From Pecten maximus (lineage: Eukaryota): DNA of 64,000 bases. Both the position numbers and the translations under genes were made by a program. Of the stretch, positions 24,801 through 55,175 are shown piece after piece. Positions within the stretch are counted from its first letter, which is position 1. Every line of letters starts with the position of its first letter. The stretch is taken from NCBI RefSeq assembly GCF_902652985.1, contig NC_047026.1, forward strand, positions 31,248,001 through 31,312,000. The letters run 5' to 3'. Below the pieces are notes generated by a model. It searched no databases and was not told the DNA's origin. It was given only the letters and a program-made list of their open reading frames with translations.

Positions 24801-25083
24801 ATCTCCAGAATAATTGTATCAGTTCCCCAATTATCGATGGAATAACATAATTACAGTAGAAATGGGATTTAGGAGGAGTTTACCCACAGTTAATATAGTA
24901 AAGTGGAGATCGAAGTGATTCACCAGGAAAATTATACGAAAAGGCGAGCAATGTAGGTGAGAATCGACTCTCAAATCAAGTTACTGAAATAATTTCAAAA
25001 ATGGACACAGCGTAGCTTTTGTTCTTTCCACCCATTTTGGGTTTGCTCAGTGGTATCCTAGATACCGACACTTTAGACCTTTA

Positions 25084-25128
25084 TCATTACCGACGAGTCC
25101 AGGGACTAAACAGCTATACAGTATGGTG
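25084..25128 (+). ncRNA. Degenerate solo copy of the 49-bp hammerhead unit
   Basis: tcattaccgacgagtccagggactaaacagctatac aligns to catcactgacgagtcc-tagaa-ggacgaaacagctgta, with core mutations. Confidence 0.4.
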
Positions 25129-25791
25129 CAGCTTATAGTCATAGGATCCGCGATACTCTTTTTAGGGAACGACTCCCAAAGTTAACATGTGGATTAAAAA
25201 TAAATACTTTCATTGTGTTATTTCCCTGCCATCATCGTAATTAAGGATAAATTAACGATTTGTTTCGCCTACTCATTATCATCTACAGATAATAATTACC
25301 TACCGATTATCAACATACTAACATCCTATTTCTCGAAAAAAATATTCCAGGTATAAGAAAGTTACGTGCCTCTTTTTCATTACAAATTATATAATTTTAT
25401 TAGATACAGCTGTATGATCCGATTTTCCTCGATTCTCATTGGCTAAAACAATGGTCACATGGAAGTCAATAACACGAGAAACATTATATTAACTTGATGT
25501 TTCTATTGGTAGAAACACAGAGTTAATACTGCGTTTATGGCATATCACTGTGAATTTACAACGGGCAAGCGTTTTTCCACCATGTTGCAAACAAGCTTCA
25601 TATCTAATATAAAAAAATCGAGGACATTCGATTTGGTTAATATGATGTTATACCAACCTGTAGTATCTAAAATATTGATCTCGGGCTACCAGGTTGGTGT
25701 GGCCCTATATTCACCCCACCGAAGTTCCATGTTTTAGTGAGGAAATCCTATGCCTGTAATTACCCCGCTATAGGGGAAGTTAGACATTTAA

Positions 25792-26348: not shown

Positions 26349-29300
26349 TTATGGTTCGTCGTAAAGAGCAGGAGGAGGAGGAGCATTTGCTTGAACTGAA
26401 GGTAGGGATTCATAATATATTGGAGGGGAATCACAAGAAAGCGGGACCGGTTGATGATGCTGGACATCGGGATGATAACCTGGTAGGATACTTTGCTGTC
26501 CGTGAGGCATCCACTGTGTGTGTCCTGTATCTGACGACTGTTGGATAATCCCACGTGACTGGCGAAGTGGCGGCAGGTGATGCGGAGGGGCATGTGGATA
26601 ATGACCTAAATGACAGATGAAGTAAAGAATAAACACTGTCTATGTACCATTGGACCCTGTTACGTCGATGAACAAATAACATAGGTCAGTATGTTATTAT
26701 AGAATAAAAAAAAACATAAACTATTTTTTAATACTTCACAATAGTATATAACAATAGCGAAATTTATACAATTCTTAATCAATCTTTGTCAATTAATTGG
26801 ATTTTATGAGACATTATAATTACATGTACATGTACTTGAATACACAATACTTCCTAAAATAAGTATGCGTTAAATTAATTTAGCGTTATGATATAAGACA
26901 GTGCTATATAACATTTATATTTGTGTTTCACACAATTCGAGTAGTAAAACAACTTATCACTGAATACTTACTTATACTGGTTAACATAGAAGTTCTTTTG
27001 TAGCCATAGTTTCACTTCACATCACACACACAAAAAAACGAATGAAATGTTCAGTAAGATAATTATTCTGACCTTGAAATGCTGGATATGTCGGTGTAGC
27101 ATTTAAAATCTGACCAGGGTGGGTCTGGTTACTTGTCCTGTTTTTGTAATAGCAACATACGGCGACGATGATAGCTATGGCGACGAAGAGTGCAAAACCA
27201 AGTACACTGCCAACGACTATGGCCACACTGTAAAGCCAACATTTACATAGTTGACATGCCGTATCGGTATAATAATACAGTACATAGTAATATCATGTGG
27301 CATATAGATACATATATTTCCATTTGCTCTGCATTGTCACTCTACCAAGCAAAATGGAAAGTTATCAGATCATAACATTATTCTCATTGGTGTTGGTGTT
27401 GTCTGATGCCACTATATCAGGTGTATGTTTGACGTCAAGACAATTCATGCGACTGGACTTAAAAAAACCGTTGATCAACGCAGCTTGCAATGATTTATGT
27501 AGTTCTCTTGTATAAAAGATGAAAATCACCAAAGTGGAATATATTGATTAAATTGTTAATATATGTTATATAGGCATCTTATACCTCAAGGTCCTCAAAG
27601 GTCCTCAAGAAGGAAGAACTATCCATAGTTATGTGTATAATGGGACCTAGCTCAGTAGCTACTCATCAGTAGGCAGCTTACAAATCTTGATAATTGGATT
27701 TCAGTTCTAGACAATTTTACAAAGATATAGCACGGGAGTATGACAAATTAATACAAACAATAACCTTTATTACTGCAATATACACTACACTTACGCGGCA
27801 TTGTCGTCTGATACTGGGACCTCTGTCGTTGTTGTGGATTCACAACACTCAGATGCACAACAACCCTGGTAACAGTAGCCTACATACGATGTCATAAAGT
27901 AATGGTAGTCATAGTGGTAGCATATAGTGCCTGTCATACCTGGAACATATTCAAATAGAAATAATCAGTATAAAACTGCATCTTTATACCAAACTACAAT
28001 TGTATGACCGATATAATTCATCCTTTAGGTCTTCCTCTCCTCGGCTAGACAATGTCACCAAAGCAATTTCATTTATTAACGCTAAGATAAAGAGGATTTC
28101 TTCTTTTTGAATAAAACATTAAGATATTCTGACATAACGAAAAATATCTCAGGTACAGGGCATATGTCAGAGTAGGAATGAAATTTATTTTGGATTCGTA
28201 TTTTTTTCTTTTCAAACAGACTGAAAGTAGTTTTGTAACCATGCATGAAAGAAATTATCACTAATGGCGAAAATATGTGTTTTAGAAAAAAGTGTTTATT
28301 TGTATAAACATGACACTGATCAAAGGATATAATAACATTGACCTAGCATTGAAATTTGTTGAATAATCGTTATTAACTGTTCTGTCGAGGTACTCTTAAA
28401 GTTAATTATATGTGAAACAATTGTATAAAAATGTCGTAATGTCCCAGTTGATGCGATATTTTGAAGGACGTATGCCCATTTTCACGATTTCCAGCGACAG
28501 ATGTCGAGTGCTGATGGAAAAATTAACCACACAAGGCTATGAGAGAAGCAGGTTGAAGGTCATAGAAAAGTTTTATGGTCTGGTCGACGTCGTGATCACC
28601 TTTGGAAGTATTCTATTTCATTGTGCGATGTCAGACATGTTCGATGTTTGTTGATACATCAAGTGGTTCTGTTTTCACCACCGTACTTGTAACTTAACTT
28701 GTAACTTATCTAGATTTGTATGGCGGGTGTCGTCGATTTGTCACATATATATATATGGTGGGTGTCGTCGATTTTTCATAGGTTTGTATGGTGGGTGTCG
28801 TCGATTTGACATAGGTTTGTATGGTGGGTGTCGTCGATTTGTCATAGATATATATATGGTGGGTGTCGTCGATTTGACATACACACATATATATATATAT
28901 GGTGAGTGTCGTCGATTTGACATAGATTTGTATGGTGGGTGTTGTCGATTTGACATAGGTTTGTATGGTGGGTGTTGTCGATTTGACATAGATTTGTATG
29001 GTGGGTGTCGTCGATTTGACATAGATTTGTATGGTTGATGGCGTCTATGAAGCAGAAGACGCTTAACCTTCCGGAACACCTGGTCTTATTCTCTTTGTAC
29101 TTTAGCAATGGTTTTCATGCAAATCATTAGTTTGGTGAAGATTTTACCCCCCGTTTTATCGACTTTGAGTTAGAATTATGAAACAGCTGTGTGGTGTCCC
29201 TTACATCACTGACGTGTCCAATAATGGTGAAACAGCTGTGTGGTGTCCCTTACATCACTGACGAGTCCAATAATGGTGAAACAGCTGTGTTATGTCCCTT

Positions 29301-30552
29301 ACATCACTGACGAGTCCTAGAAGGACAAACAGTTGTATGGTTTGGTTTATTTTGTTTAACGCCCTTTTCACAGCCAGGGTCATTTACATCTTCGCTAGCC
29401 AAGGCTTCTGATTACGTTACACTCCGCGAACCCTTGGCAGATATAGGCGTCAGTTCTGGCCCTCTAGCGGTGATTCGAAATTACCACCCTTCACGCATGA
29501 AATTTTCGACCAATCAAAACAAGCGTTACCGATTTACTTCATCGGTGATGTTTACAAACACACATCGAGGTTTGGTGTCATTTCGATGAGATATGTGATC
29601 AATGACTTATATGAATTGATCAAACACTGCGAATGTTCCCCCAAAGATTGTGATTTTTGTATTTAGGTAAAATGCCATGACATAGTCGGCAATGTAGCTA
29701 TGTACTGGGTGCCGCATTTTTTGTTTACTGCGAAACCAAGCCAGAATGTAAAACGCGATTTGATTGGGTGCCCTGGGATTCCAGGGCGCGACGGTTTGAA
29801 CACGACTATATCCGCCAAGGGTTCGTGGAGTGTAACGTAATCAGAAGCCTTGGCTAGCGAAGATGGGTCATTTAAGGACGTGCCTGGTTTTGGAGGTGGG
29901 GGGAAAGCAGGAATACCCGGAGAAAAACCACCGATCTATGGTCAGTACCAAGCAATTGCCCAACATGAGTTTCGAACTCGCAACCCAGAGATGGAGTGAT
30001 GATAAAGTGGCGGGACACCTTAACCACTCGGCCTCCGCGGCCCAACTGTATGGCGTCCCTTACATCACTGACGAGCCCTAGAAGAGCGAAACGGATGTAT
30101 CGTGTCCCTAACATCACCGACGAGTCCGAGAGGGCGAAACAGCTTTGTGGTGTAGCTCAATCATTTACTAAATTTATGTTCAAAGGTGATATTTACTTCA
30201 GAGCCGTTGTGAATCTTTTGAAGATGTACAGTTATCATGATATGAACTGAAAGCGAATTTCCTACACTGGCGTTTGCCCAGATTAAATACATTATAAGAA
30301 GAGGTCTGGGCAAACGTAATAGATTCATACACGTCTCAACACTATAGAGGCAGACTAAAATAAACCCGAGCCTTTTCCACTGAGTATCAAACACCATAGT
30401 CACAGAAGACTCGGACTGAAGGCGCAGATGAACATATGATACCGGACAACGACAGTTGCCATATTATTTTCGATAAGTATATTTCACAATTGTTTGCTCT
30501 TACCTGGGATCAACAACGTAAGTACCAAACCAATGGTATGACCGGGGGCCAT
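26349..30552 (-). CDS. CYYR1/Shisa-like (WBP1/VOPP1 group) single-pass membrane protein, 4 exons, 201 aa
   Basis: Exons (minus) 30552-30504, 27939-27795, 27227-27073, 26605-26349 (606 nt, phase-consistent). Signal-like MAPGHTIGLVLTLLIPG, Cys/Tyr-rich ectodomain ICYHYDYHYFMTSYVGYCYQGCCASECC, TM AIVVGSVLGFALFVAIAIIVAVCC, Pro/Gln-rich tail with PPIY (PPxY). The first exon is the least certain. Confidence 0.85.
28430..29170 (+). mobile_element. Decayed 3' end of a Penelope-like (Naiad-type, RT-terminal) retroelement
   Basis: Peptide SQLMRY...DRCRVLMEKLTTQGYERSRLKVIEKFYG...MSDMF* resembles the C-terminus of mollusc RT-terminal PLEs, followed by the 3' motif gggtgtcgtcg...gaagacgcttaaccttccggaacacctgg. 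Assignment by recognition. Confidence 0.55.
28708..29035. repeat. 33-bp minisatellite (about 9-10 copies)
   Basis: Unit atttgtatggtgggtgtcgtcgatttgacatag. Confidence 0.9.
29338..30043 (-). mobile_element. tRNA-derived SINE with V-domain-like core, interrupted by a MITE
   Basis: Minus strand: head gggccgcggaggccgagtggttaagg (A box), gagttcgaaac (B box), core ggtttttctccgggtattcctgctttcc, tail ...ggcgttaaacaaaataaaccaaacca. Confidence 0.8.
29387..29865. mobile_element. MITE with ~59-bp TIRs and 9-bp TSD (MULE- or AcademH-type)
   Basis: TIR catcttcgctagccaaggcttctgattacgttacactcc... / ...ggagtgtaacgtaatcagaagccttggctagcgaagatg; exact TSD ggtcattta at 29378-29386 and 29866-29874. Confidence 0.92.
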
Positions 30553-31200: not shown

Positions 31201-32674
31201 GTTTATTGTCAGTATTCTTTGTTTTTTAAACAAACGTGGACTTTTTATTGTTGTTTGGATGTTTGTGAAGGCAACCGCTATCTCATAGAATTGGATATCG
31301 GCGTTATCCTTTGGTCTGTAGCCTGTAATGTCGTATATACCCCACGTTAAATTTCCTGTGTAATGCAGTTGCATATTGATTACGAAATATAGTAATATAA
31401 TATATACAGCATCTGTTAGTAACATATTTAAATGTGCTATTAATTTGTGTATCTGATGTAAATCGTTAGATACAGTCTTGTATATGTATCGTAGAGGACC
31501 AGACAATAATGATCCATGATGTATATTGATTTACAGACGACTGTAAACACTTGGTACCTGGTAATTTTAAAAGTCACACCAAAGCTCCAGTTATTACAAA
31601 GATCTGTGGATACTAACCGATTGAGATATATTCTCAATCATTCTTACAAACTTTCACGATCAGAATATTTCTTGAATTTCATATTTCCCTAATAAATCCA
31701 ATTACGTTTTTTGCAAAATTTATGTTTTTGGTGAATTGTTAATCTGTAGACCAGTTTGGAGATAAATTCATGTAAGGTAAACTGATATACATGTAGTGGG
31801 AGATGAAGTCATTACATGTTAAAGCCAGTATAAGATAGCAGAGTCCGATAAAGTTTTATCAGGAAAAAATACACAACGCGGCGCGTCAGCACTTCTTGAA
31901 TAGACACGGGATGTTTTACTGAGAAAAGCTGCGCACATCAGCAAAAACGAACGCATGGTGCATGGTTGAGCTATCAAATGACAGCCGATCATCTCCAATT
32001 TTAACCTGAACATTTTTCATTACCCATATTAGCAAGCCTCGTGAAATGGTCAATGCCACCACTAAAAAGTCTGTCCGAGTTTCTTCTGTCAACGTACAGA
32101 TAGCTATATTTAATGTCCAGGTACTACTAGGAATTTCAGTTAAGTGCTTGATGACAAGGTACACATTATTTAACAATCTTACAGTTACATCCTGGGAAGG
32201 TCAAGGGCGCGTTAGCTATTATGGTAGGTTAAACCGACTAAAATCCGGTTCACTATTTATTCTATCTCGAAGAAAGTTATTTTCAACGAAAAGAATCGCC
32301 CGAACGACCAGTCATTTCCATTCTATCTTTGTCGGAAACATTGAATTCCTAAGATAAATGTTAAGATGGCCATAAGTCCATATTTGGTCAGAACAGAAAC
32401 AATATCGGGAATAAATCCTTATAGTGTTTTCATTCTTGAACCAAGTGCCAGGAAATATTGATACCTGCGCGTGGTAAAAGTCGCTTTACATCGTATTTGT
32501 TAAGTTCCGTGAGATCAACCTTTTCATGTTATGCTATTGTATTTGTTTACAAGTGATATCTATGTATTGATTTCCTGGAATACCACTGACATAATACTGT
32601 GAGAGTACACTCAAATTTAGGCGCATAACTGAATTCAAACAAGATAAGATATAAGCTCAATGATGAATTGGCGC

Positions 32675-34490
32675 ACTCGCAATACACTCGCAATACACTC
32701 ACAATACACTCACAATACACCCATAATACACCCATAATACACCCACAATACACCCATAATACACTCACAATACACCCACAATACACTCACAATACACTCA
32801 CAATACACTCACAATACACCCACAATACACCCACAATACACTCACAATACACCCACAATACACTCACAATACACTCACAATACACCCACAATACACTCAC
32901 AATACACTCACAATACACCCACAATACACTCACAATACACCCACAATACACTCACAATACACCCACAATACACCCACAATACACCCACAATACACTCACA
33001 ATACACTCACAATACACTCACAATACCCTCACAATACACTCACAATACACCCACAATACACCCACAATACACTCACAATACACTCACAATACACTCACAA
33101 TACACCCACAATACACCCACAATACACCCACAATACACCCACAATACACCCACAATACACTCACAACACCCACAAACCCCACAAGACCGCACAAACACTC
33201 ACAAACACCACAAGACACCACAAGACACCCACAAGACACCCACAAACAACCACAAGACACGCACAAGACACCACAAGACACGCACAAGACCCCACAACAC
33301 CACAAGTACACACCCACAAGACACCACAAACACGCACAAGACACTACAAGACACCACAAACACGCACAAGACACCCACAAGACACGCACAAGACACGCAC
33401 AAGACACCACAAGACACCCACAAGACACCACCACAAGACACGCACAAGACACGCACAAGACACCCACAAGACACCACAATACACCCACAAGACACGCACA
33501 AGACACGCACAAACACCCACAATACACCCACAATACACCACAATACACCACAAACACCACAATACCCACAAATACCCACAATACACCACCACAAACCCAC
33601 AATACACGCACAATACACCCACATCCACAGTACACTCACAAACACTCCACAGACACCCACAAGACACCCACCTCACAAGACACCCCACAACCACTCACAA
33701 TACCCACAAGACACCACAATACACCCACAATACACCCACAATACACTCACAATACACTCACAATACACCCACAATACACCCCAAACCCCACAATACACGC
33801 ACAAACACTCACAACACCACAACCCAATACAATACACTCACAAACCCACAACACCACAAACACCCCAATCCCACAGATACATCAATACACGCCACATACA
33901 CAACCACATACAACACTCACAATACACCACAATCAATCCTCACAATACACCCACATACACCCACAATACACCCACATACACGCACAATACAACCCACAAA
34001 CACCCACAATACACACACAATACACCCAACATACACCACAGACAATACACTCACAATACCAACACCACAATACACCACAACAAATACACTCACTCACCCA
34101 ATACACCCAAAGACAGCACAACGACAACAGCAAGACACCCCACGCACAAGACACCCACAAGACACCCACAAGACACGCACAAGACACCCACACAAGACAC
34201 GCACAAGACACGCACAAGACACGCACAAGACACCCACACCAATACACCACAATACACCACAATACACTACACTCACAATACACTCACAATACACCCACAA
34301 TACACCCACAATACACCCATAATACACCCACAATACACCCACAATACACTCACAATACACTCACAATACACTCACAATACACTCACAATACACTCACAAT
34401 ACACCCACAATACACTCACAATACACCCACAATACACTCACAATACACTCCAATACACCCACAATACACTCACAATACACTCACAATACA
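32675..34490. repeat. 11-bp minisatellite (CACAATACACY)n with a central CACAAGACAC variant and a scrambled core
   Basis: Direct reading; source of the 612-aa low-complexity ORF. Confidence 0.95.
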
Positions 34491-35861
34491 CGTTTCATCG
34501 TCCTAACCATAAACACATAAACACAGATAACCCAACCTACCATTTTTATATACACCTCATCTCTTTGATAATATAATATGTCCTATGTAATTAACACTAT
34601 TGGATGACAATGTGTCCCAAATGGATATAAAATACAGCGGTGTACTTTTACAGTGCAATTAAACTGAAATACGTTGATGAAAGCTATAGTATGACAGAAC
34701 ATCAGAATGAATAATTAAATATTGATTTTTCTAAATATAGTTCCAATACTGATAAGTAAACAACATCAACTATAAATAAAATCAATTATGAAAGCAATTG
34801 ATTGGAACCTATTCCATTTGTGTATTCAGTGGCAGCTAAATGAAACTCTGGTTGTTGACAAAACAAAATGTGTCTATAAATAACGCATTATACACATATT
34901 TACATATTTACAGAGACTGGCTTATGTGTGCTGTGGGAACCCGTTTGTTTACAGGTTGTGTTGAGATTACATTGGTGTACACCCAAGGATGACATTTTTA
35001 TAGGAAACGACAGCTCACGAGACCAGGTAACTAGACGCAGGAGAATTAAGCAGGTAAGTCGGGTACACAGTGTTTACAACCAAGTGATTGGTATGCATTT
35101 TAAATCGCGTATTTTGCTCGAGTGTGTGAACAATATTTTAAATGAGATGGAAATTCTCCTGTACTGCCCATCCAGAGAACTCTAGAGAACTACCACAAGG
35201 ACCCAGAAAGTGATGAAATGGTAGGGAAGTCGCCTAGGAATTCCTTCAATCGCAAGGAAAACCGCAACATATTTTGATGTGATGGTAGGATTGTCGCTAG
35301 GGTATAGTGTGAGTGGTAAGGGTATTCCTCGTCTATATAATTGTTGTTAGCAGATCAGCAATGTTAGCGGACATCTATAATTCATAAGTCGTCTGCCATT
35401 TACTCTTAGTTTGCTCAAAACCTTCATATTGACTATAACATTAAAACGGATCAATCACTGAAAGGCATAGTATAACATAAAACCTTTCCCCTGTCCATCT
35501 GGTAGACAGTAGAATTGTTATACTCTCTCAGGAAGACAATAATACAAGGTGATTTACACAGTCATTCAAGTCACTCAACAATAACATTCGTCCGTCATTT
35601 CAATTGTACCCGACTACCAGGCTTAAACGATGTGTAATATATATTAAATATTTTATGGTATACATACAAATAATGTAGCAAAAACAAATCGGTAAACCTG
35701 GCTCCACACTAGATTCTAGGTATTGGCAATTCTAAAATTAAGTCAGCAGAATTTGGTGTTGTGTTGTGTAACTGTATCACAATTCTGGTGGGTCGAGCAA
35801 ACAATACATACTGACGTTGTTAACATATATGGCACCTATACAAAAATGAGTTCGATACAAC

Positions 35862-36383
35862 ACCTCATACAGATGTTTTGTCCTTCTAAGACTCGTCAGT
35901 GATGTTAGGGACATAATAAAGCTGTTTCGTCCTTCTAGGACTCAACAATGACGTTAGTGACATCATACAGCTGTTTTGTCCTTCTGTGATGTTAGGGACA
36001 TCATAAAGCTGTTTCGTCCTTCTAGGACTCATCAGTGATGTTAGGGACATCATACAGCTGTTTCGTCCTTCTAGGACTCATCAGTGATGTTAGGGACATC
36101 ATACAGCTGTTTCGTCCTTCTAGGACTCATCAGTGATGTTAGGGACATCATACAGCTGTTTCGTCCTTCTAGGACTCATCAGTGATGTTAGGGATACCAT
36201 AAAGCTGTTGTCCTTCTAGGACTCGTCAGTGATGTTAGGGACATCATAAAGCTGTTTCGTCCTTCTAGGACTCAACAATGACGTTAGTGACACAATACAG
36301 CTGTTGTCCTTCTAAGACTCATCAGTGATGTTAGGGACATCATACAGCTGTTTTGTCCTTGTAGGACTCGTCAGTGACGCTAA
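35862..36383 (-). ncRNA. Tandem array of 11 minimal hammerhead ribozymes (49-nt unit); three consecutive perfect units at 36047-36193
   Basis: Minus-strand unit: ACAUCA-CUGAUGA-GUCC-UAGAA-GGAC-GAAAC-AGCU-GUA^UGAUGU-CCCUA. It has the canonical CUGANGA/GAAA core, a 4-bp stem II, a 6-bp stem I (ACAUCA/UGAUGU), an NUH triplet GUA and a palindromic stem III. Confidence 0.9.
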
Positions 36384-37479
36384 TGGTTTAAAGTGATATG
36401 GGTATGTTGTTTTAAATTATTGAGATATTAAGTTAACCAGGCGTTGGTGTTCGACTACGTCATGTTGTTTTGTAATGCCTAATTAAGCCCTACTGCACAA
36501 AGCAACGGCGAAGAAAGAATGTCCCCTGTTATTGGAATTATGTGGCAGAATAGCGGGAAACATCAACAGAAGAACGCTAATCTGGAAAAAAACTACAAAT
36601 GAAAAAAAACGTGAAATTATGCTTTCTAAAATATATAATGTTCTCTTAACGAGAGAAGGAACATGTTTGTTTTGTGTTGTCATCTTAAATGATATCGTTT
36701 TGTAAGGGAACGTCGCGTGTCGGTTATTGGCCCCAAAACAGGTCTTTGTTTGTTAACATCACATTCGCCACGTGGCGTTTTCCCTTTTAAATATACAGTA
36801 CATAAATTAAGATAGACATCGTTACTTTATCTCCCCTAACTGTAAATATTTACCGATCGGTTATCAAGAACTTACCAGAATGTGTTGAACTTCTGCGGTG
36901 ACAATATGGACTCCACATGCTATATAGTAATAAAACAATTTTCTAGTGATGATCAATTATTAGATTTAAACAAATGATAGCTGAAATAGTGTAATTTGTC
37001 TCGCGTTTTTGGCAGCACACATTTCATATTAAATTGTGCTGTGTGTAGCAGGATTAATGGGATGTACAATTGTACGACAAAAATATACGCCAATAGTAGT
37101 CAACATCTCTGGCGAAGTTAAAACCCATTAACAGTTTTCTTTATAGTTTCACCTGGTGTTTCCCTTTATTTATTGGATTGTGTTTCTAATAGATTTGTAT
37201 ATACTGTATTACTGGAATAGAATTATCTGTAGAAGGTACATTGACAACAGATCTAGCCTACAGTTATAAGGTGTCATTGTCTGACCCGAATTTCGTCAAT
37301 AGGAAAGCATTACCGAATTTAAGCGAGATGTTGTTGTGAAGTCCGATAATGCTTCCCGATGGAACATTACCAGTTATGTCCTAAGGTTAAGAAATATTGA
37401 TGAGACGGGGTTCCAAATCAAGGGCAATAATTGCATAATACATGAAAAATATTGATTTGCATGACAAAATGTCTATATT

Positions 37480-38010
37480 GCCACGCATGATATACTGTCA
37501 TATTGATATGCATGATATACTGTCATATTGCCACGCATGATATACTGTCATATTGATATGCATGATATACTGTTATATTGATGCGCATGACAAACTGCTG
37601 TATTCAATTTGTTTATTTTAGCTTTGGGCTTTACAGCTGATCAGTACATATAACAATTAACATTTTACAATTGTCAGGCATGACATACTTTTTTTAGTAC
37701 AACGTACTGTTATATCGCCAAGCATGACATGACACTATTGCATTGTCACACACGAGAAACTGTTATATCGTCACGCATGGCATGTATACTATTATATCGA
37801 CACGCATGACATGTATACTATTATATTGTCACGCATGACATGTATACTATTATATTGTCACGCATGACATGTATACTATTATATTGTCACGCATGACATG
37901 TATACTATTATATTGTCACGCATGACATGTATACTATTATATTGTCACGCATGACATGTATACTATTATATTGTCACGCATGACATGTATACTATTATAT
38001 TGTCACGCAT
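37480..38010. repeat. 29-bp minisatellite plus related degenerate 25-bp units
   Basis: Unit catgacatgtatactattatattgtcacg, about 8 copies at 37776-38010. Confidence 0.9.
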
Positions 38011-39379
38011 GGCAAACATTTATATTGCATTATTTATTAATTATATATGCATGACATGCAACGCACTGTTATATCGTCACAAATAGCATATATATTGTTA
38101 CGTATGACAAACTTTTATACCGTCACGCATGAAAAACTTATATTTTTACTCAATAAACAATTCGCTAACGGCTCTTTATATGAATTGGAGGCTAAAATGT
38201 TCCATGGACAGAGAGTGAGATGCGAGATTCCAATCTCCCTATTTGGAGGTTGTCCAATATAAATATACATTGGTGTGTCTACAGGCTAAAGTAATGTCCA
38301 TCATACCAAACTATTTTATTGTACAAACAGTAGTTGTATGTGTTTGTAATTATGAAACATGTACGTTCGCCCCGGATGTGTAATGGACGTGTAGCCGACA
38401 ATTACACTCTAGACTTCACTACACAAACACTTCGTGTTTCCGGTATGTTTATCGTAGCTACACCATTGTTTTCATTATTTTCAGGATGTCTTTTACTATT
38501 GTGATTCGATCTGTTGGCTGGAACTTCTGTATGGCAAACTTTAGCATCTTTATGTCGATGTTGTATTACTGTTATATGTAGTAAAAATAAACATGTAAAT
38601 TACAAGCCACAACACGAAAACAGCTAGGGGCCTTTTGTGTATGCTTTAATCAGGCTTTATCTAGTTATCCGAGGTCCGACTTCCTGCACGTAAGTACGCC
38701 CGTCAGTACTGATTTGGCCGAGTTTAAAACCCCGCAGTGACGATATTGTATGATATGTATATTCCTGTATAAAAATATATTATTTTTTACAGTTCTGATA
38801 ATGAGATTATTCATAATTATTTTAATCATTTATTCTTTTCTGCAATTATTTTTATCATTTAAGGTAATTATAATAAAATTTGTGCAATATAATAAATAAA
38901 AAAAACAATATTTGAGCATAGTTTCAAAAACAGATTTGATCCTGCGGGCCGGGGAATAGAAAAGGATAAACAAGAACATACTTTTGCACACAGCATGTAC
39001 GCCAGAGGCGACTAATGTGGTGATCCCGTGAGAATTGGTAATTTGCTTTAGTGTCCTATCCTCGGTCTGTTTGAGATAAAGACAATATAGACCTGCTAGC
39101 TGTACCACTGTAACAGTTGTGATCTGCGTCTTCTGTCTACTTTCTAATGTACAATGTTCGGTTTTTTTTTGTTCCATTGGAGTAAATATCGCTTTTGCCT
39201 TATTGTGACCGCGCAAGCGAGAAGATTTATCGGTTCTGTTCTTTGATCAAGACAAACCAAATTATATGTACTTTTACGAATATGTGGAATTGGTACATGT
39301 ATACAATTTCCAGCAGTTGGTGAGTTGCGTTCTTTTATGGTATCTGTCAGAGACCAACCGAAGATGTAGCCTTTGGATC

Positions 39380-39775
39380 ATACCTGTTGTTTTCTGCTTG
39401 ATGTTCAGTGTAAAGTTTTCATAATAATGTGACTGGTTTGGGTGTTACGTTACCGTCTCAGGTAGGTGTGACATTTCAGTGTTATAACACTATAATGTAG
39501 ACCTGGGGTAACGTCATGCTACCGTCTCCATGTGTGACACTATAATGTAGACCTGGGGTGACGTCATGCTACCGTCTCCATGTGTGACATTTCAGTGTGA
39601 TAACACTATAATGTAAACCTGGGGTGACGTCATGTTACCGTGTCCCGGTGTGACATTTCAGTGCGCTAACACTATAAACGTGTCCATCAGCAGCTCCTCG
39701 TCATCCATGGACACAGTCTTCGCATAACCTTAGTTGTTGAGAGGATACAGAACCATAAATTGTCAAACAATAAAC
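39380..39775 (+). mobile_element. Probable SINE remnant with internal tandem duplication
   Basis: Repeated acactataatgtagacctggggtgacgtcatgctaccgtctcc blocks and a SINE-like 3' end ataaccttagttgttgagaggat...aaacaataaac. Confidence 0.35.
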
Positions 39776-41073: not shown

Positions 41074-41885
41074 ACGTGTACCTCCACTAACACCATCAGT
41101 CATGTGATGTACGTGTACCTCCACTAACACCATCAGTCATGTGATGTACGTGTACATGTACTAACACCATCAGTCATGTGATGTACGTGTACATCTACTA
41201 ACACCATCAGTCATGTGATGTACGTGTACCTCTACTTACACCATTAGTCATGTGATGTACGTACATCTACTGACACCATCGGTCATGTGATGTACGTGTA
41301 CCTCTACTAACACCATTAGTCATGTGATGTACGTGTACCTCTACTAACACCATCAGTCATGTAATGTACGTGTACATCTACTAACACCATTAGTCATGTG
41401 ACGTGTACCTCTACTAACACCATCGGTCATGTGATGTACGTGTACCTCTACTAACACCATTAGTCATGTGACGTGTACCTCTACTAACACCATCGGTCAT
41501 GTGATGTACGTGTACCTCTACTAACACCATTAGTCATGTGATGTACGTGTACATCTACTAACACCATTAGTCATGTGATGTACGTGTACCTCTACTAACA
41601 CCATTAGTCATGTGATGTACGTGTACCTCCACTAACACCATCAGTCATGTGATGTACGTGTACATCTACTAACACCATCAGTCATGTAATGTACGTGTAC
41701 CTCCACTAACACCATCAGTCATGTGACGTGTACCTCTACTAACACCATTAGTCATGTGATGTACGTGTACCTCCACTAACACCATTAGTCATGTGATGTA
41801 CGTGTACCTCCACTAACACCATCAGTCATGTGATGTACGTGTACCTCTACTGACATCATCGGTCATGTGATGTACGTGTACCTCT
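41074..41885. repeat. 37-bp minisatellite with degenerate flanks (about 40820-42360)
   Basis: Unit cgtgtacctctactaacaccattagtcatgtgatgta, about 22 copies. Confidence 0.95.
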
Positions 41886-42805
41886 AGGCTAATAACACTA
41901 TCAATGTGTCAGGTATGTGGCCACACGTGTGACATACCTCCATATTGTACTAGAGGTATGATATATGTTAACAAGCGTGTTTCTCCATGCAAGTGACATC
42001 AGCAGTCATGTACGACTGTACACACGTGCATATCTAGAATTAGTCAAATGTGTATATGTTGACCAGGTGTACATCCATTAACACCAGCGCGTTTGATCGT
42101 GTGATGTACACACGTGTACCCCCAATAACACATGCAGTGTGTGACATTTATGTGGTGGCCTCGCGTGTAATTCGAATCAGTCATGTGATGTGTGTTGCCT
42201 ACGTTACAATAATACCTGCAGTGTGTGGTGTATGTGTACACCGTGTACTTCCTTCAGCAAGCGTACCGTGTCATATGTACATTTATGTGGCCACGCGTGC
42301 ATCTCGAATCAGTCATGTGATCACATGTGTGGCCCACGTGTACATCCAATAACACTAGCAATGCAGTGTGTGTGTATAAAGATAGGGCTAGAGACTTTAC
42401 TAAGACGTATATGAGCCGCCGGCTGGCATTTAGGTCCTTAAGTTCTATCCAATGAAAACGGAGAAAAAAGGGAATTCCGTCAGAGTTATTATTTCCATTC
42501 TATTTCCGTTTCGCGCGAAAACGGGAATCCCACTTGCGTTGCAAAAACACAAAATGCAGCTGATATACTTTGTTATAGATGAACTTTAAATACCTGTCCT
42601 TAAACTTTAGATATGTCGGTTAATTTTCCATTCAATAACATTAACGGTAAATGTAAATAAAAGTGTTTATTCAACAAAAATATCGACACGAAAGGGGTTT
42701 CCCCGTTTTCTGCCGAACACACTTCCGGTATTTACGTAGTTGTTTACATTCGCTACGAAGATGGCAGATGGGAGTGTTTAGGTCTAACGCATCAAGAAAT
42801 CGTAT

Positions 42806-51690: not shown

Positions 51691-51799
51691 TAACAGTTCA
51701 TTCCTCTAGTTCTTTACCGGAGAAGTTCCAATATACGTATAATAACTGGTTTACTAGCTTTACGTTTTCAGTTTAACACTTAGCTAAGATTGTTTTAGC

Positions 51800-54700
51800 G
51801 TGTCCTGTTTCGGTGTGGTGTGTCCTTTGTGGACGTGGTGTGTCCTGTGTCAGTTTAGTGTGTACTGTGTCGGTTTGGTGTGTCCTTTGTGGGTTTGATG
51901 AGTCCTTTGTGGGTTTGGTGTGTCCATTGTGGGTTTGGTGTGTCCATTGTGGGTTTGGTGTGTCCTTTGTAGGTATGGTGTGTCCTTTGTGGGTTTGGTG
52001 TGTCCTTTGTGGATTTGGTGTGTCCTTTGTGGGTTTGGTGTGTCCTGTGTCGGTGGGATGTGTCCATTGTGGGTTTGGTGTGTCCATTCGTGGGTTTGGT
52101 GTGTCCTTTGTAGGTATTGTGTGTCCTTTGTGGGTTTGGTGTGTCCTGTGTCGGTGGGATGTGTCCTTTGTGGGTTTGATGTGTCCTTTGTAGGTTTGGT
52201 GTGTCCTTTGTGGGTTTTTTGTGTGTCCATTGTGGGTTTGTTGTGTCCTTTGTGGGTTTTTTGTGTGTCCATTGTGTCCTTTGTGGGTTTGGTGTGTCCT
52301 GTGTCGGTTTGGTGTGCCCTTTGTGGGTTTGGTGTGTCCTTTGTGGGTTTGGTGTGTCCATTGTGGGTTTGGTGTGTCCTGTGTCGGTTTGGTGTGCCCT
52401 TTGTGGGTTTGGTGTGTCCTGTGTCGGTTTGGTGTGCCCTTTGTGGGTTTGGTGTGTCCTGTGTCGGTTTGGTGTGCCCTTGGTGGGTTTGGTGTGCCCT
52501 TTGTGGGTTTGATGTGTCCTTTGTGGGTTTGCTGTGTCCATTGTGGGTTTGTTGTGTCCTTTGTGGGGTTTTTGTGTGTCCATTGTGGGTTTGGTGTGTC
52601 CATTGTGGGTTTGGTGTATCCTTTGTGGGTTTGGTGTGCCCTTTGTGGGTTTGGTGTGCCCTTTGTGGGTTTGGTGTGTCCTTTGTGGGTTTGGTGTGTC
52701 CTGTGTCGTTGGGATGTGTCCTTTGTGGGTTTGATGTGTTCTTTGTGGGTTTGGTGTGTCCTGTGTGGGTTTGGTGTGTCCTTTGTTGGTTTGGTGTGTC
52801 CTGTGTCGGTGGGATGTGTCCATTGTGGGTTTGGTGTGTCCTTTGTGGGTTTGGTGTGTCCTTTGTGGGTTTGGTGTGTCCTTTGTTGGTTTGGTGTGTC
52901 CTGTGTCGGTGTGGTGTGTCCTTTGTGGGTATGATGTGTCCTTTGTGAGTTTGGTGTGTCCTTTGTGGGTTTGGTGTGCCCTTTGTGGGTTTGGTGTGTC
53001 CATTGTGGGTTTGGTGTGTCCTTTGTAGGTATGGTGTGTCCTTTGTGGGTTTGGTGTGTCCTGTGTCGGTGGGATGTGTCCTTTGTGGGTTTGATGTGTC
53101 CTTTGTAGGTTTGGTGTGTCCTTTGTGGGTTTTTTGTGTGTCCATTGTGGGTTTGTTGTGTCCTTTGTGGGTTTTTTGTGTGTCCATTGTGTCCTTTGTG
53201 GGTTTGGTGTGTCCTGTGTCGGTTTGGTGTGCCCTTTGTGGGTTTGGTGTGTCCTTTGTGGGTTTGGTATGTCCATTGTGGGTTTGGTGTGTCCTGTGTC
53301 GGTTTGGTGTGCCCTTTGTGGGTTTGGTGTGTCCTGTGTCGGTTTGGTGTGCCCTTTGTGGGTTTGGTGTATCCTGTGTCGGTTTGGTGTGCCCTTGGTG
53401 GGTTTGGTGTGCCCTTTGTGGGTTTGATGTGTCCTTTGTGGGTTTGGTGTGTCCATTGTGGGTTTGGTGTGTCCTTTGTGGGTTTGGTGTGTCCTTTGTG
53501 GGTTTGTTGTGTCCTTTGTGGGTTTTTTGTGTGTCCATTGTGGGTTTGGTGTGTCCATTGTGGGGTTGTTGTATCCTTTGTGGGTTTGGTGTGCCCTTTG
53601 TGGGTTTGGTTTGCCCTTTGTGGGTTTGGTGTGTCCTTTGTGGGTTTGGTGTGTCCTGTGTCGGTGGGATGTGTCCTTTGTGGGTTTGATGTGTCCTTTG
53701 TGGGTTGGGTGTGTCCTGTGTGGGTTTGGTGTGTCCTTTGTTGGTTTGGTGTGTCCTGTGTCGGTGGGATGTGTCCATTGTGGGTTTGGTGTGTCCTTTG
53801 TTGGTTTGGTGTGTCCTGTGTCGGTGGGATGTGTCCATTGTGGGTTTGGTGTGTCCTTTGTGAGTTTGGTGTGTCCTTTGTTGGTTTGGTGTGTCCTGTG
53901 TCGGTGTGGTGTGTCCTTTGTGGGTATGGTGTGTCCTTTGTGAGTTTGGTGTGCCTTTTGTGGGTTTGGTGTGCCCTTTGTGGGTTTGGTGTGACCATTG
54001 TGGGTTTGGTGTGTCCTGTGTCGGTGGGATGTGTCCTTTGTGGGTTTGGTGTGTCCTGTGTCGGTGGGATGTGTCCTTTGTGGGGTTGGTGTGTCCTTTG
54101 TGGGTTTGGTGTGTCCTTTGTGGGTTTGGTGTGTCCTGTGTCGGTGGGATGTGTCTTTTGTGGGTTTGGTGTGTCTAGTGTCGGTGGGATGTGTCCATTG
54201 TGGGTTTGGTGTGTCCTGTGTCGGTGGGATGTGTCCTTTGTGGGTTTGATGTGTCCTTTGTGGGTTTGGTGTGTCCTGTGTGGGTTTGGTGTGTCCTTTG
54301 TGGGTTTGGTGTGTCCTGTGTCGGTGGGATGTGTCCTTTGTGGGTTTGGTGTGTCCTTTGTGGGGTTTGGTGTGTCCCATTGTGGGTTTGGTGTGCCCTT
54401 TGTGGTTTGGTGTGTCCTGTGTCGGTGGGATGTGTCCTTTGTGGGTTTGGTGTACCCTTTGTGGGTTTGGTGTGTCCTTTGTGGGTTTGGTGTGTCCTGT
54501 GTCGGTGGGATGTGTCCTTTGTGGGTTTAGTGTGTCCATTGTGGGTTTGGTGTGTCCTTTGTGAGTATGGTGTACCCTTTGTGGGTTTGGTGTGTCCTGT
54601 GTCGGTGGGATGTGTCCTTTGTGGGTTTGGTGTGTCCTGTGTCGGTGGGATGTGTCCTTTGTGGGTTTAGTGTGTCCATTGTGGGTTTGGTATGTCCTTT

Positions 54701-55175
54701 GTGGGTTTGGTGTGTCCTTTGTGGGTGTGGTGTGTCCTTTGTGGGTATAGTGTACCCTTTGTGGGTTTGGTGTGTCCATTGTGGGTTTGGTGTGTCCTTT
54801 GTAGGTTTGGTGTGTCTTTTGTGGGTTTGGTGTGTCCTGTGTCGGTTTGGTGTGCCCTTTGTGGGTTTGGTGTACCCTTTGTGGGTTTGGTGTGTCCTTT
54901 GTGGGTTTGGTGTGTCCTTTGTGGGTTTGGTGTGTCCTGTGTCGGTTTGGTGTGCCCTTTGTGGGTTTGGTGTACCCTGTACTAACAGTTCATTCCTCTA
55001 TAGTTCTTTACCGGAGAAGTTCCAATATACGTATAATAACTGGTTTACTAGCTTTACGTTTTCAGTTTAACACTTAGCTAAGATTGTTGGGTTTGGTGTG
55101 CCCTTTGTGGGTTTCCTTTGTGGGTTTGGTGTGTCCTGGGTCGGTGGGATGTGCCCTTTGTGGGTTTGGCGTGTC
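51800..55175. repeat. 20-bp GT-rich minisatellite (about 3.3 kb)
   Basis: Unit gtgtcctttgtgggtttggt with variants; source of the 974, 741 and 662-aa spurious ORFs. Confidence 0.95.

What the first reader, a model, noticed from the sequence alone, without database searches (positions are those of the whole stretch)
36047..36201. Tandem geometry converts a weak monomer into a full type III hammerhead with complementary loops
Seen: ACAGCUGU is a perfect 8-nt palindrome, so one unit's copy can pair with the next unit's to give an 8-bp stem III, while UGAUGU-CCCUA-ACAUCA closes stem I across the unit boundary. Loop 1 (CCCUA) and loop 2 (UAGAA) contain complementary triplets CUA/UAG. Known: loop1-loop2 contacts accelerate natural hammerheads at physiological Mg2+. 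Inference: activity would depend on copy number (single unit poor, two or more efficient), and a circular monomer would resist re-cleavage because its stem III is only 2 bp.
Basis: partly seen in the sequence, partly recalled or inferred. Interest (0 to 1): 0.8.

Follow-up and report, generated by a model that had tools for sequence, protein, structure and literature searches.

The report
Tandem 49-nt hammerhead ribozyme minisatellite
A 49-base repeat in the king scallop genome encodes a hammerhead self-cleaving RNA that is predicted to fold properly only when two or more units are transcribed together; this is a compact new example of a principle already known from other animal hammerhead repeats.

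Summary
Window 35868-36391 is an 11-unit array of a 49-nt repeat. Each unit carries a complete hammerhead core, a 6-bp stem I hairpin, a 4-5-bp stem II and the palindrome ACAGCUGU.

- **Rfam scores.** A single unit scores 33.9 bits as a type I hammerhead (cut-off 34). The 57-nt span across two units scores 47.0 bits as type III (cut-off 48.5). Other genomic copies pass the type I cut-off, up to 42.1 bits.
- **Folding.** RNAfold gives the active fold a probability of about 2-5e-4 in a linear or circular monomer. It gives 0.44-0.57 for 1.16- and 2-unit transcripts.
- **Known principle.** Tandem dependence through a palindromic helix III is the published double-hammerhead principle for metazoan type I hammerheads. 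The mechanism is therefore not new.
- **Loop pairing.** The proposed CUA/UAG loop pairing is unsupported. Chance gives it with P about 0.12, it shows no covariation, and it is the least preserved helix.
- **What I add.** The assembly statistics match Pecten maximus. The family is dispersed, with 52 arrays sampled. Arrays sit inside a composite element with a conserved leader of about 100 nt and a tail of about 100 nt. Most units are decaying; only 21% of neighbour pairs are fully intact. No link to Penelope-like elements was found.
- **Expression.** RNA libraries contain the family, but this does not prove transcription.

The scan noted the same family on another piece of this genome.

The parts
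35868..36391 (-). Whole 49-nt hammerhead minisatellite: 10 in-register units plus one internally deleted unit at about 35966-36003. Two-unit higher-order periodicity.
   Evidence: TRF period 49 and 96. Unit table. blastn of the family consensus.
36004..36199 (-). Block of four units with intact catalytic cores (CUGAUGA ... GAA-A).
   Evidence: Three Rfam Hammerhead_1 hits of 33.9 bits at 36145-36188, 36096-36139 and 36047-36090, and one of 31.0 bits at 35998-36041.
36103..36159 (-). Cross-unit type III-like hammerhead 1: stem III 8/8 bp, stem I 6 bp with loop CCCUA, stem II GUCC/GGAC with loop UAGAA. Predicted cleavage 3' of A36151 (GUA|U).
   Evidence: Rfam Hammerhead_3 47.0 bits, E 3.3e-10. 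This fold is the MFE of the 57-nt RNA, P = 0.44.
36054..36110 (-). Cross-unit hammerhead 2, identical in sequence to hammerhead 1. Predicted cleavage 3' of A36102.
   Evidence: The MFE of the 155-nt transcript contains this fold.
36005..36061 (-). Cross-unit hammerhead 3. Stem III is 7/8 bp because the downstream palindrome reads ACAGCUUU. Predicted cleavage 3' of A36053.
36152..36159 (-). Palindrome ACAGCUGU. It serves as the 5' strand of helix III for the downstream core and as the 3' strand for its own core. Further copies lie at 36103-36110 and 36054-36061.
   Evidence: Read directly from the sequence.
36375..36404 (-). Tentative remnant of the family's 5' leader, directly upstream of the first, degenerate unit.
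   Evidence: Resembles the leader consensus in the alignment of 20 loci. The local alignment score is not above shuffled controls.
35781..35867 (-). Tentative remnant of the family's 3' tail, directly downstream of the last unit.
   Evidence: Alignment with 22 other tails. Not significant on its own.
25022..25140 (+). Degenerate solo copy of the same element: leader, one hammerhead unit and the start of the tail, with no array.
   Evidence: blastn leader hit at 25022-25087. Sequence read.
29171..29345 (+). 5'-truncated copy of the family with three units (stem II variant) followed by the start of the tail.
30043..30153 (+). Two degenerate units of the family, with core C/U changes and stem II variants.

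Best explanation
The stretch lies in a minus-strand minisatellite whose 49-nt unit is a canonical invertebrate-style type I hammerhead ribozyme with no spacer.

**Fold (sequence shown, activity inferred).**
- A lone unit can form only a 2-bp helix III capped by the palindromic tetraloop AGCU. It is predicted to misfold, with CUG of the core pairing with CAG of the palindrome.
- When two or more units are transcribed in tandem, the palindrome of unit k pairs with that of unit k+1 to give an 8-bp helix III.
- The UGAUGU-CCCUA-ACAUCA hairpin at the unit junction forms stem I.
- The core of unit k+1 is then positioned to cleave after the GUA of unit k.
- This is one half of the classical double hammerhead, written as a type III permutation.

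**Predicted products (inferred).** Repeated cleavage would release 49-nt monomers with 5'-OH and 2',3'-cyclic phosphate ends. These monomers fold poorly into the active form.

**Genomic setting (shown).**
- The array is one copy of a dispersed, non-autonomous repeat family. The assembly statistics match the Pecten maximus assembly.
- The family has the form leader (about 100 nt), then (49-nt hammerhead)n, then tail (about 100 nt).
- The 49-nt unit looks like a tandem duplication of the core of a solo type I element. Loop 1 (CCCUA) corresponds to the 5' side of the solo element's stem I internal loop.
- Arrays then grow and homogenise at the DNA level and decay by CpG mutation.

**Loop contact.** A loop 1-loop 2 contact is geometrically plausible. 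Nothing shows that it is a CUA/UAG Watson-Crick triplet.
For: **Motif.**
- Full core, G10.1-C11.1 pair and three helices.
- Rfam type III 47.0 bits and type I 33.9 bits.
- Sister copies in the genome reach 42.1 bits, above the cut-off of 34. About 120,000 rough first-look candidates were found.

**Fold energetics.** The probability of the active fold is 1.4e-4 to 5e-4 in the monomer, 0.44 in the 57-nt RNA and 0.55-0.57 in the dimer. The dimer MFE is the hammerhead. The MFE of the 155-nt transcript contains the fold.

**Family.**
- 952 units from 54 array segments in 52 loci; spacing is 49 nt in 80% of neighbours.
- Neighbour helix III is 8/8 bp in 444 of 760 pairs and 6 or more in 687 of 760.
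- Changes fixed within an array and seen in several arrays are mostly wobble-compatible transitions, at unit positions 3, 12, 16, 27 and 45 (position 28 in one array). Disruptive transitions are mostly private to single arrays.
- Stem I shows an excess of compensated double changes: 15 against 5.3 expected, and 25 against 9.8 expected.

**Composite element.**
- Shared leader and tail in alignments of 20 and 23 loci.
- The tail lies next to the array in about 30 of 52 loci, with E down to 2e-27.
- One tail alone finds 39 other genomic places.
- A solo one-unit copy lies at 25022-25140.
- The solo consensus folds as a type I motif with a 6-bp stem I, a 5-nt bulge and a distal helix.

**Precedent and identity.** PMC4209133 and PMC7229834 describe the mechanism. 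The assembly size of 918,306,378 bp in 3,983 scaffolds matches PMC7191990.
Against: - No cleavage or expression was shown. The RNA evidence consists of contigs only, and DNA carry-over of a very high-copy repeat cannot be excluded. The unique flanks of this locus have zero depth in the three RNA-seq runs.
- Window copies fall 0.1 and 1.5 bits short of the Rfam cut-offs.
- At one sequence per array there is no significant covariation for any helix, because identity is 94%.
- Only 161 of 760 neighbour pairs are fully intact.
- The essential G12 is A in 17% of units and is the majority base in four arrays. Arrays therefore expand regardless of catalytic competence.
- Nearest-neighbour energies ignore tertiary contacts, so monomer activity may be underestimated. 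The literature attributes low single-motif activity to helix III shorter than the invertebrate 2-bp type, and a cloned mussel repeat self-cleaved.
- The leader and tail of this particular copy are too diverged to be significant.
Confidence: 0.75

Rival explanations
1. Inert relic. The hammerhead motif is real by descent. The arrays are DNA-level minisatellite expansions that are neither transcribed nor cleaved in vivo. This locus has no present activity.
For: - CpG decay at core positions, and only 21% of neighbour pairs intact.
- G12A is the majority base in four arrays.
- A 96-nt higher-order period indicates unequal crossing-over.
- The locus-specific flanks are absent from three RNA-seq runs.
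Against: - Three RNA-seq libraries each hold 108-153 contigs of the family at high word depth.
- Variants that recur across arrays are mainly structure-compatible.
- The window copy still has three fully intact cross-unit ribozymes.
Confidence: 0.2
2. The single unit is already an adequate ribozyme. Tertiary loop contacts stabilise the 2-bp helix III, as in other invertebrate type I hammerheads. On this view tandem geometry adds little.
For: [quoted passage not shown]
- A cloned mussel genomic repeat self-cleaved at about 0.1 per min in that study.
- The type I architecture is also present in the solo element.
Against: - The predicted active-fold probability is about 1e-4, with a competing inactive MFE that sequesters the core.
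- The palindrome is kept at 8/8 bp in 58% of neighbour pairs.
- PMC4209133 reports that such short helices impede monomer cleavage.
Confidence: 0.2
3. A three-base-pair Watson-Crick kissing contact (C9-G31, U10-A30, A11-U29 of the unit) between loops 1 and 2 is the tertiary interaction that speeds cleavage.
For: - The complementarity is present in the family consensus.
- Perreault et al. 2011 (PMC3088659) estimate that about 40% of hammerheads use a stem I-stem II pseudoknot.
[quoted passage not shown] Here the stems are 6 and 4 bp.
Against: - Only 3 bp are possible. Chance gives this with P = 0.12.
- Compensated double changes are 4, 0 and 2 against 7.3, 2.3 and 5.3 expected.
- It is the least preserved helix, with 11 of 50 arrays unpaired at C-G.
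- Loop 2 variants leave loop 1 unchanged.
- U29 can instead pair with A33 to extend stem II.
- In the one mutational series quoted (a metagenome type II hammerhead), trimming the pseudoknot from 6 to 4 bp cut the rate about 20-fold, and trimming further cut it more than 100-fold.
Confidence: 0.25
4. Chance resemblance: a simple repeat that happens to look like a hammerhead.
For: No Rfam hit at gathering thresholds in the window.
Against: - E = 3.3e-10 for the cross-unit segment.
- All invariant core nucleotides and all three helices are present.
- Sister copies score above the cut-off.
Confidence: 0.02

Closest known systems
Metazoan type I hammerheads in tandem repeats / non-LTR retrozymes (newt satellite 2, coral, mussel, axolotl; Cervera & de la Pena 2020, PMC7229834)
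   Same: - Type I core, with helix I 6 bp and helix II 4 bp.
- Helix III of 2 bp capped by a palindromic tetraloop.
- Head-to-tail repeats dispersed over many chromosomes.
- Predicted activation through a dimeric extended helix III.
   Different: - The unit is 49 nt rather than about 170-400 nt. There is no spacer, so stem I is closed by a 5-nt hairpin loop and every unit boundary is itself part of a ribozyme.
- Arrays carry a shared leader and tail rather than being bare multimers.
- circRNA has not been shown.
Double hammerhead (Forster et al. 1988 as cited in PMC4209133; minimal Penelope-like-element hammerheads that act as dimers)
   Same: A palindromic helix III region pairs between two copies to build a stable helix III. 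Single copies are poor, and multimers cleave.
   Different: - Here the two copies are immediately adjacent, so pairing is intramolecular and nearest-neighbour.
- This is a canonical 6/4-bp architecture. It is not the min-HHR type with a long helix II and a bulged base.
- No RT/GIY-YIG ORF lies within 1-1.5 kb of 52 arrays or in the window.
Type III hammerheads of viroids and plant satellite RNAs (Rfam RF00008)
   Same: The cross-unit fold has the type III topology, with stems I and II closed by loops and helix III open. It scores 47.0 bits against RF00008.
   Different: - It is genomic DNA-encoded animal satellite, not an RNA replicon.
- The topology arises only from the tandem arrangement of a type I unit.
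- The score is below the curated cut-off of 48.5.
Sm-alpha / SINE-like hammerhead elements of Schistosoma (from my own knowledge; mentioned in passing in PMC8490949)
   Same: A short non-autonomous dispersed element carrying a type I hammerhead between conserved flanking arms.
   Different: - No tRNA-like head was recognised in the leader.
- The internal hammerhead is amplified into a 49-nt minisatellite.

Membership tests
Hammerhead ribozyme (any topology) | Conserved core C3-U4-G5-A6-N7-G8-A9 ... G12-A13-A14, an A15.1-U16.1 pair, and H17 (not G) at the cleavage site | tested here: met
   CUGAUGA ... GAA-A ... U-A| is present in four consecutive units. The genome-wide consensus has C at N7.
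Hammerhead ribozyme (any topology) | Three helices around the core, with a G10.1-C11.1 pair closing helix II | tested here: met
   Stem I 6/6 bp and stem II 4/4 bp with G-C at its base. Stem III is 8/8 bp between neighbours, or 2 bp within a unit. This fold is the MFE of the 57-nt and dimer RNAs.
Hammerhead ribozyme (any topology) | Covariance-model score at or above Rfam's curated gathering score | tested here: not met
   For the window copies: RF00163 33.9 against 34.0, and RF00008 47.0 against 48.5. Sister copies of the same 49-nt family elsewhere in the genome do pass RF00163 (34.0-42.1 bits). The shortfall for type I is tied to U instead of C at N7, a position the core allows to vary.
Hammerhead ribozyme (any topology) | Site-specific self-cleavage | not testable with these tools
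   Only contigs of RNA runs were available. They cannot show RNA ends.
Hammerhead ribozyme (any topology) | Helices supported by covariation | tested here: inconclusive
   - With 51 arrays at 94% identity, 92.8% of cells are paired. That equals the shuffled value, and only 2 double changes occur.
- At the unit level, stem I shows an excess of compensated changes, but units within an array are not independent.
Non-LTR retrozyme | Type I hammerhead within head-to-tail genomic repeats dispersed in the genome | tested here: met
   52 arrays on many chromosomes, each 4-55 units long.
Non-LTR retrozyme | Repeat unit of about 170-400 nt that forms a highly self-paired circRNA | tested here: not met
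   The unit is 49 nt, with spacing of 49 in 760 of 898 neighbour pairs. The published size range comes from PMC7229834.
Non-LTR retrozyme | Abundant monomeric circular RNA in tissues | not testable with these tools
   The family is present in three RNA-seq libraries, but only as short contigs. There is no information on ends or circularity.
Penelope-like element pLTR hammerhead | Motif lies in the repeats that flank an RT plus GIY-YIG ORF | tested here: not met
   - PLE-type ORFs exist in the genome. One search shows RVT_1 plus GIY-YIG. One search gives 150 GIY-YIG matches, with open frames up to 929 aa.
- tblastn of those ORFs finds nothing in the flanks of 52 arrays or in the window.
- No unit, leader, tail or Rfam hammerhead lies within 1.5 kb of 12 PLE copies.
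- The sample is small and covers few PLE families.
Pseudoknot-stabilised hammerhead (Perreault et al. 2011) | Watson-Crick pairing between the stem I and stem II loops, supported by covariation or mutation (four or more pairs in most type II examples) | tested here: not met
   Only 3 bp are possible and 4 are not. There is no covariation, and this helix has the lowest pairing, 85%.

The most novel reading that the evidence does not exclude
The 49-nt unit may be an ultra-minimal retrozyme. On this reading, arrays are transcribed and cut by neighbour-assisted hammerheads into 49-nt monomers. The monomers are then ligated into the smallest known ribozyme-bearing circular RNAs. Copy number would act as a switch: solo leader-hammerhead-tail elements give stable RNA, while elements whose core has duplicated shred themselves.
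Probability: 0.12. Interest if true: 0.7.

Novelty: new member of a known kind. Interest (0 to 1): 0.4.

Why it matters
**If active.** This would be the most compact natural tandem hammerhead I could find described. It is a satellite with no spacer, in which every base of the repeat belongs to the ribozyme and each unit needs its neighbour to fold.
- It offers a clean natural system for testing copy-number-dependent ribozyme activity.
- It also lets one ask how small a retrozyme-like RNA can be.

**For genome annotation.** It identifies one family within the repeat fraction of the scallop genome that preconfigured repeat libraries did not classify (16.7% of the genome, PMC7191990). One search gave about 120,000 rough first-look hammerhead candidates. 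The family is a hammerhead-bearing composite element.

Tried and rejected
- **Rfam at gathering thresholds** on the whole window gave no hit. The hits appear only with E-value thresholds, because the scores sit just below the cut-offs.
- **Link to Penelope-like elements.** GIY-YIG search, Pfam check, tblastn of PLE ORFs against array flanks and the window, blastn of unit, leader and tail against 12 PLE loci and an Rfam scan of those loci all found no link.
The partner element and the context of tail-only hits stay open.
- **Covariation at one sequence per array** has no power. The palindrome's central dinucleotide shows no excess of compensated AT or TA forms. Some apparent co-changes in positions 41-48 are register shifts from 1-2-nt deletions.
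- **First flank comparison** by blastn (E 1e-5, over 60 nt) wrongly suggested unrelated flanks. Alignment later showed the shared leader and tail.
- **Array 5' ends as a proxy for cleaved RNA ends.** Leaderless arrays start at scattered phases, many at 38-49, not at the cleavage site.
- **Leader and tail of the window copy** are not above shuffled controls.
- **Search with the solo copy 25010-25150** found only itself.
- **RNA evidence.** Only contigs were available, and I had no call left to lay a silent control stretch.
- **ARAGORN** found no tRNA in the tRNA-like stretch at 29900-30045.
- **Literature searches** for hammerhead with scallop, or with bivalve and satellite DNA, found no report of this family.

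Full report
**1. What is there**

Tandem Repeats Finder places the array at 35865-36377 with 10.8 copies, and also reports a 96-nt higher-order period.

The ribozyme sense is the minus strand. Starting after the predicted cleavage site, a unit reads:
- UGAUGU-CCCUA-ACAUCA (stem I hairpin),
- CUGAUGA (core),
- GUCC-UAGAA-GGAC (stem II),
- GAA (core),
- ACAGCUGU (palindrome),
- A (cleavage-site nucleotide).

A unit-by-unit table shows 10 in-register units and one unit with an internal deletion.
- Four consecutive units, 36199-36004, have intact cores.
- Neighbouring palindromes pair 8/8, 8/8 and 7/8.
- The locus therefore holds three complete cross-unit hammerheads, at 36159-36103, 36110-36054 and 36061-36005.
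- Predicted cleavage is 3' of A36151, A36102 and A36053.

**2. Is it more than chance?**

Yes.
- Rfam finds nothing at gathering thresholds.
- With E-value thresholds, each perfect unit matches Hammerhead_1 at 33.9 bits against a cut-off of 34.0 (E 1.2e-6).
- The 57-nt cross-unit segment 36103-36159 matches Hammerhead_3 at 47.0 bits against 48.5 (E 3.3e-10).
- Elsewhere in the same genome, copies of the same 49-nt family score 34.0-42.1 bits on Hammerhead_1, above the cut-off.
- The window copies carry U rather than the family's usual C at the variable core position N7. That site is a CpG in the family consensus.

**3. The tandem-geometry claim**

ACAGCUGU is its own reverse complement. Within one unit it can form only A-U and C-G pairs around an AGCU tetraloop.

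ViennaRNA results:

| RNA | Probability of active fold |
|---|---|
| Linear monomer | 1.4e-4 to 5e-4 |
| Circular monomer | 1.8e-4 |
| 57-nt RNA (1.16 units) | 0.44 |
| Dimer | 0.55 (0.57 for the family consensus) |
| Trimer | 0.07 and 0.20 at its two sites |
| Tetramer | 0.09, 0.45 and 0.09 at its three sites |

- The monomer's minimum-free-energy structure is inactive. In it, CUG of the core pairs with CAG of the palindrome.
- The hammerhead is the minimum-free-energy structure of both the 57-nt RNA and the dimer.
- The 155-nt reader interval also contains the fold in its minimum-free-energy structure (z = -3.3).

These energies ignore tertiary contacts. [quoted passage not shown] A cloned mussel repeat in that study self-cleaved at about 0.1 per min (PMC7229834). 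'Monomer poor' is thus a prediction and not a certainty.

**4. This principle is already in the literature**

Cervera & de la Pena 2014 (PMC4209133) state the following about most metazoan hammerheads.
- They are type I motifs with helix I of 6 bp and helix II of 4 bp.
- Helix III has 1-2 bp capped by a small palindromic loop.
- This unstable helix impedes cleavage by the monomer.
- A second copy in tandem gives an active dimeric ribozyme.
- The arrangement is thought to allow cleavage of multimers while sparing circular monomers.

The scallop unit fits this description exactly. The 'type III' fold is a permutation of the same motif. It is one half of a double hammerhead, in which the hairpin between units supplies stem I. 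What is unusual is the size. Published animal retrozyme repeats are about 170-400 nt. Here the repeat is 49 nt with no spacer at all.

**5. The loop claim**

CUA in loop 1 and UAG in loop 2 are complementary. The evidence that this pairing matters is weak.
- RNAfold prefers a fifth U-A pair in stem II, which leaves an AGA triloop.
- In 952 units, the three proposed pairs show no excess of compensated double changes: 4, 0 and 2 observed against 7.3, 2.3 and 5.3 expected.
- With one representative per array (alignment A1), the loop helix is the least preserved. It is 85.3% paired against 93.0-94.5% for the real stems.
- Array-level loop 2 variants (UAAUA, AAGAA) and unit-level ones (AAAUA, CAGAA, UAAAA) occur with loop 1 unchanged.

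In its favour, Perreault et al. 2011 (PMC3088659) estimate that about 40% of hammerheads use a stem I-stem II pseudoknot. [quoted passage not shown] In the one construct they dissected (a type II ribozyme from a metagenome), trimming the pseudoknot from 6 to 4 bp cut the rate about 20-fold. I put this sub-claim at about 0.25.

**6. What the array belongs to**

The genome has 918,306,378 bp in 3,983 contigs, and contig 19 has 32,483,354 bp. These are the published statistics of the Pecten maximus assembly (PMC7191990). That paper does not mention hammerheads, Penelope elements or satellites.

*The family is dispersed.*
- The 155-nt query finds 183 scored matches out of 849 candidates, on most chromosomes.
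- The Rfam model gives about 120,000 rough first-look candidates.
- I collected 54 array segments in 52 loci, holding 952 units.

*Most units are decaying.*
- Spacing is 49 nt in 80% of neighbours.
- Only 161 of 760 neighbour pairs are fully intact.
- CpG sites decay. N7 C>U occurs in 18% of units, and the essential G12>A in 17%, where it is the majority base in four arrays.
- Arrays therefore expand and homogenise whether or not they are catalytically competent. Together with the two-unit higher-order period, this points to DNA-level unequal exchange.

*Some signal of selection on source copies.* Changes that are fixed within an array and recur in several arrays are mainly wobble-compatible transitions in stems, at positions 3, 12, 16, 27 and 45 (position 28 in one array). 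Disruptive changes are mostly private to single arrays. This suggests that pairing mattered in the source copies.

**7. A composite element**

A first blastn of the flanks suggested they were unrelated. Boundary analysis and alignments then showed a shared 5' leader of about 100 nt and a shared 3' tail of about 100 nt. Examples are L066:1437-1536 for the leader and L064:1836-1935 for the tail.
- The tail adjoins the array in about 30 of 52 loci, with E down to 2e-27.
- One tail alone finds 39 other places in the genome.
- The leader is seen less often, as expected if copies are 5'-truncated.

The window also holds other copies:
- a degenerate solo copy (leader, one unit, tail) at 25022-25140,
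- a 5'-truncated three-unit copy at 29171-29345,
- two degenerate units at 30043-30153.

The solo consensus folds as a textbook type I hammerhead. It has a 6-bp stem I (GCAUCA with UGAUGC), a 5-nt bulge on the 5' strand and a distal helix.

The array's loop 1 plus the 3' strand of stem I corresponds to the end of the leader. The 49-nt unit therefore looks like a tandem duplication of the solo element's core. That duplication converted the stem I internal loop into a hairpin loop. This step is inference.

In the window copy itself, the leader and tail are too diverged to be significant.

**8. Partner element**

Penelope-like elements exist in this genome.
- There are 150 GIY-YIG matches, with open frames up to 929 aa.
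- One checked ORF has RVT_1 plus a C-terminal GIY-YIG domain.

I found no link to them.
- No PLE protein matches in array flanks or in the window.
- No unit, leader, tail or Rfam hammerhead within 1.5 kb of 12 PLE copies.

A 2026 preprint argues that vertebrate non-LTR retrozymes derive from PLE pLTRs. That remains a lead here and is not a result.

**9. Expression**

Three runs on record as RNA-seq each hold 108-153 contigs of the family at high word depth. They hold none of the unique flanks of this locus. The contigs mostly carry the family-consensus C at N7, so they come from other copies.

Contigs cannot show RNA ends or strand. A repeat with this many copies could also appear through DNA carry-over. 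Expression is therefore suggested and not shown.

**10. Verdict**

- The tandem-dependent fold is well supported by prediction and by precedent, but the mechanism is already known.
- The loop triplet is unsupported.
- The instance is a new member of the metazoan tandem type I hammerhead kind. It is notable for its 49-nt spacer-free unit and for sitting inside a leader-array-tail element.
- First-stage notes s1-785260 and s1-785340 on this window agree with this reading. Note s1-784558 recorded the same family on another piece of the genome.

Noticed in passing
window 32680-34491: A long array of an 11-nt unit (consensus CAATACACCCA), about 168 copies at 81% match. It creates spurious long ORFs on both strands, for example 32668-34506.
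   Followed up: no
window 29900-30045 (minus strand); also the downstream flank of L029: A stretch with tRNA-like box motifs (GGCCGAGTGGTTAAGG ... GGTTGCGAGTTCGAAAC) abuts the two degenerate hammerhead units at 30043. It looks like the head of a tRNA-derived SINE, and a similar stretch lies near the array in L029. ARAGORN calls no tRNA there.
   Followed up: partly
window 37449-38011, 39487-39677, 41074-41886: Several further minisatellites lie just downstream of the hammerhead array, with periods of 25/50, 29, 50/66 and 37/144 nt. They are unrelated to it in sequence.
   Followed up: no
window 51773-54779: A cluster of long overlapping ORFs on both strands, up to 974 aa, with no Pfam match. 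This is probably a compositionally biased or repetitive region and not a gene.
   Followed up: partly
L030 (G000:C5:37224513-37227556), 897-1177 (+) and 1214-1600 (-): Two hammerhead arrays in opposite orientation lie about 40 nt apart. This head-to-head arrangement could form a long hairpin if transcribed through.
   Followed up: no
L022 (G000:C15:18198572-18201615): An array in which two stem II/loop 2 variants alternate (GUCU-AAAUA-GGAC and GUUU-UAAUA-GGCC). The AAAUA loop resembles the loop 2 of the Rfam type I consensus, and these copies give the highest Rfam scores (41-42 bits).
   Followed up: partly
G000 genome-wide: At least 150 GIY-YIG domain matches, many within open frames of 700-930 aa. 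One checked ORF carries RVT_1 plus GIY-YIG. Penelope-like elements with apparently intact ORFs are abundant in this scallop genome.
   Followed up: partly
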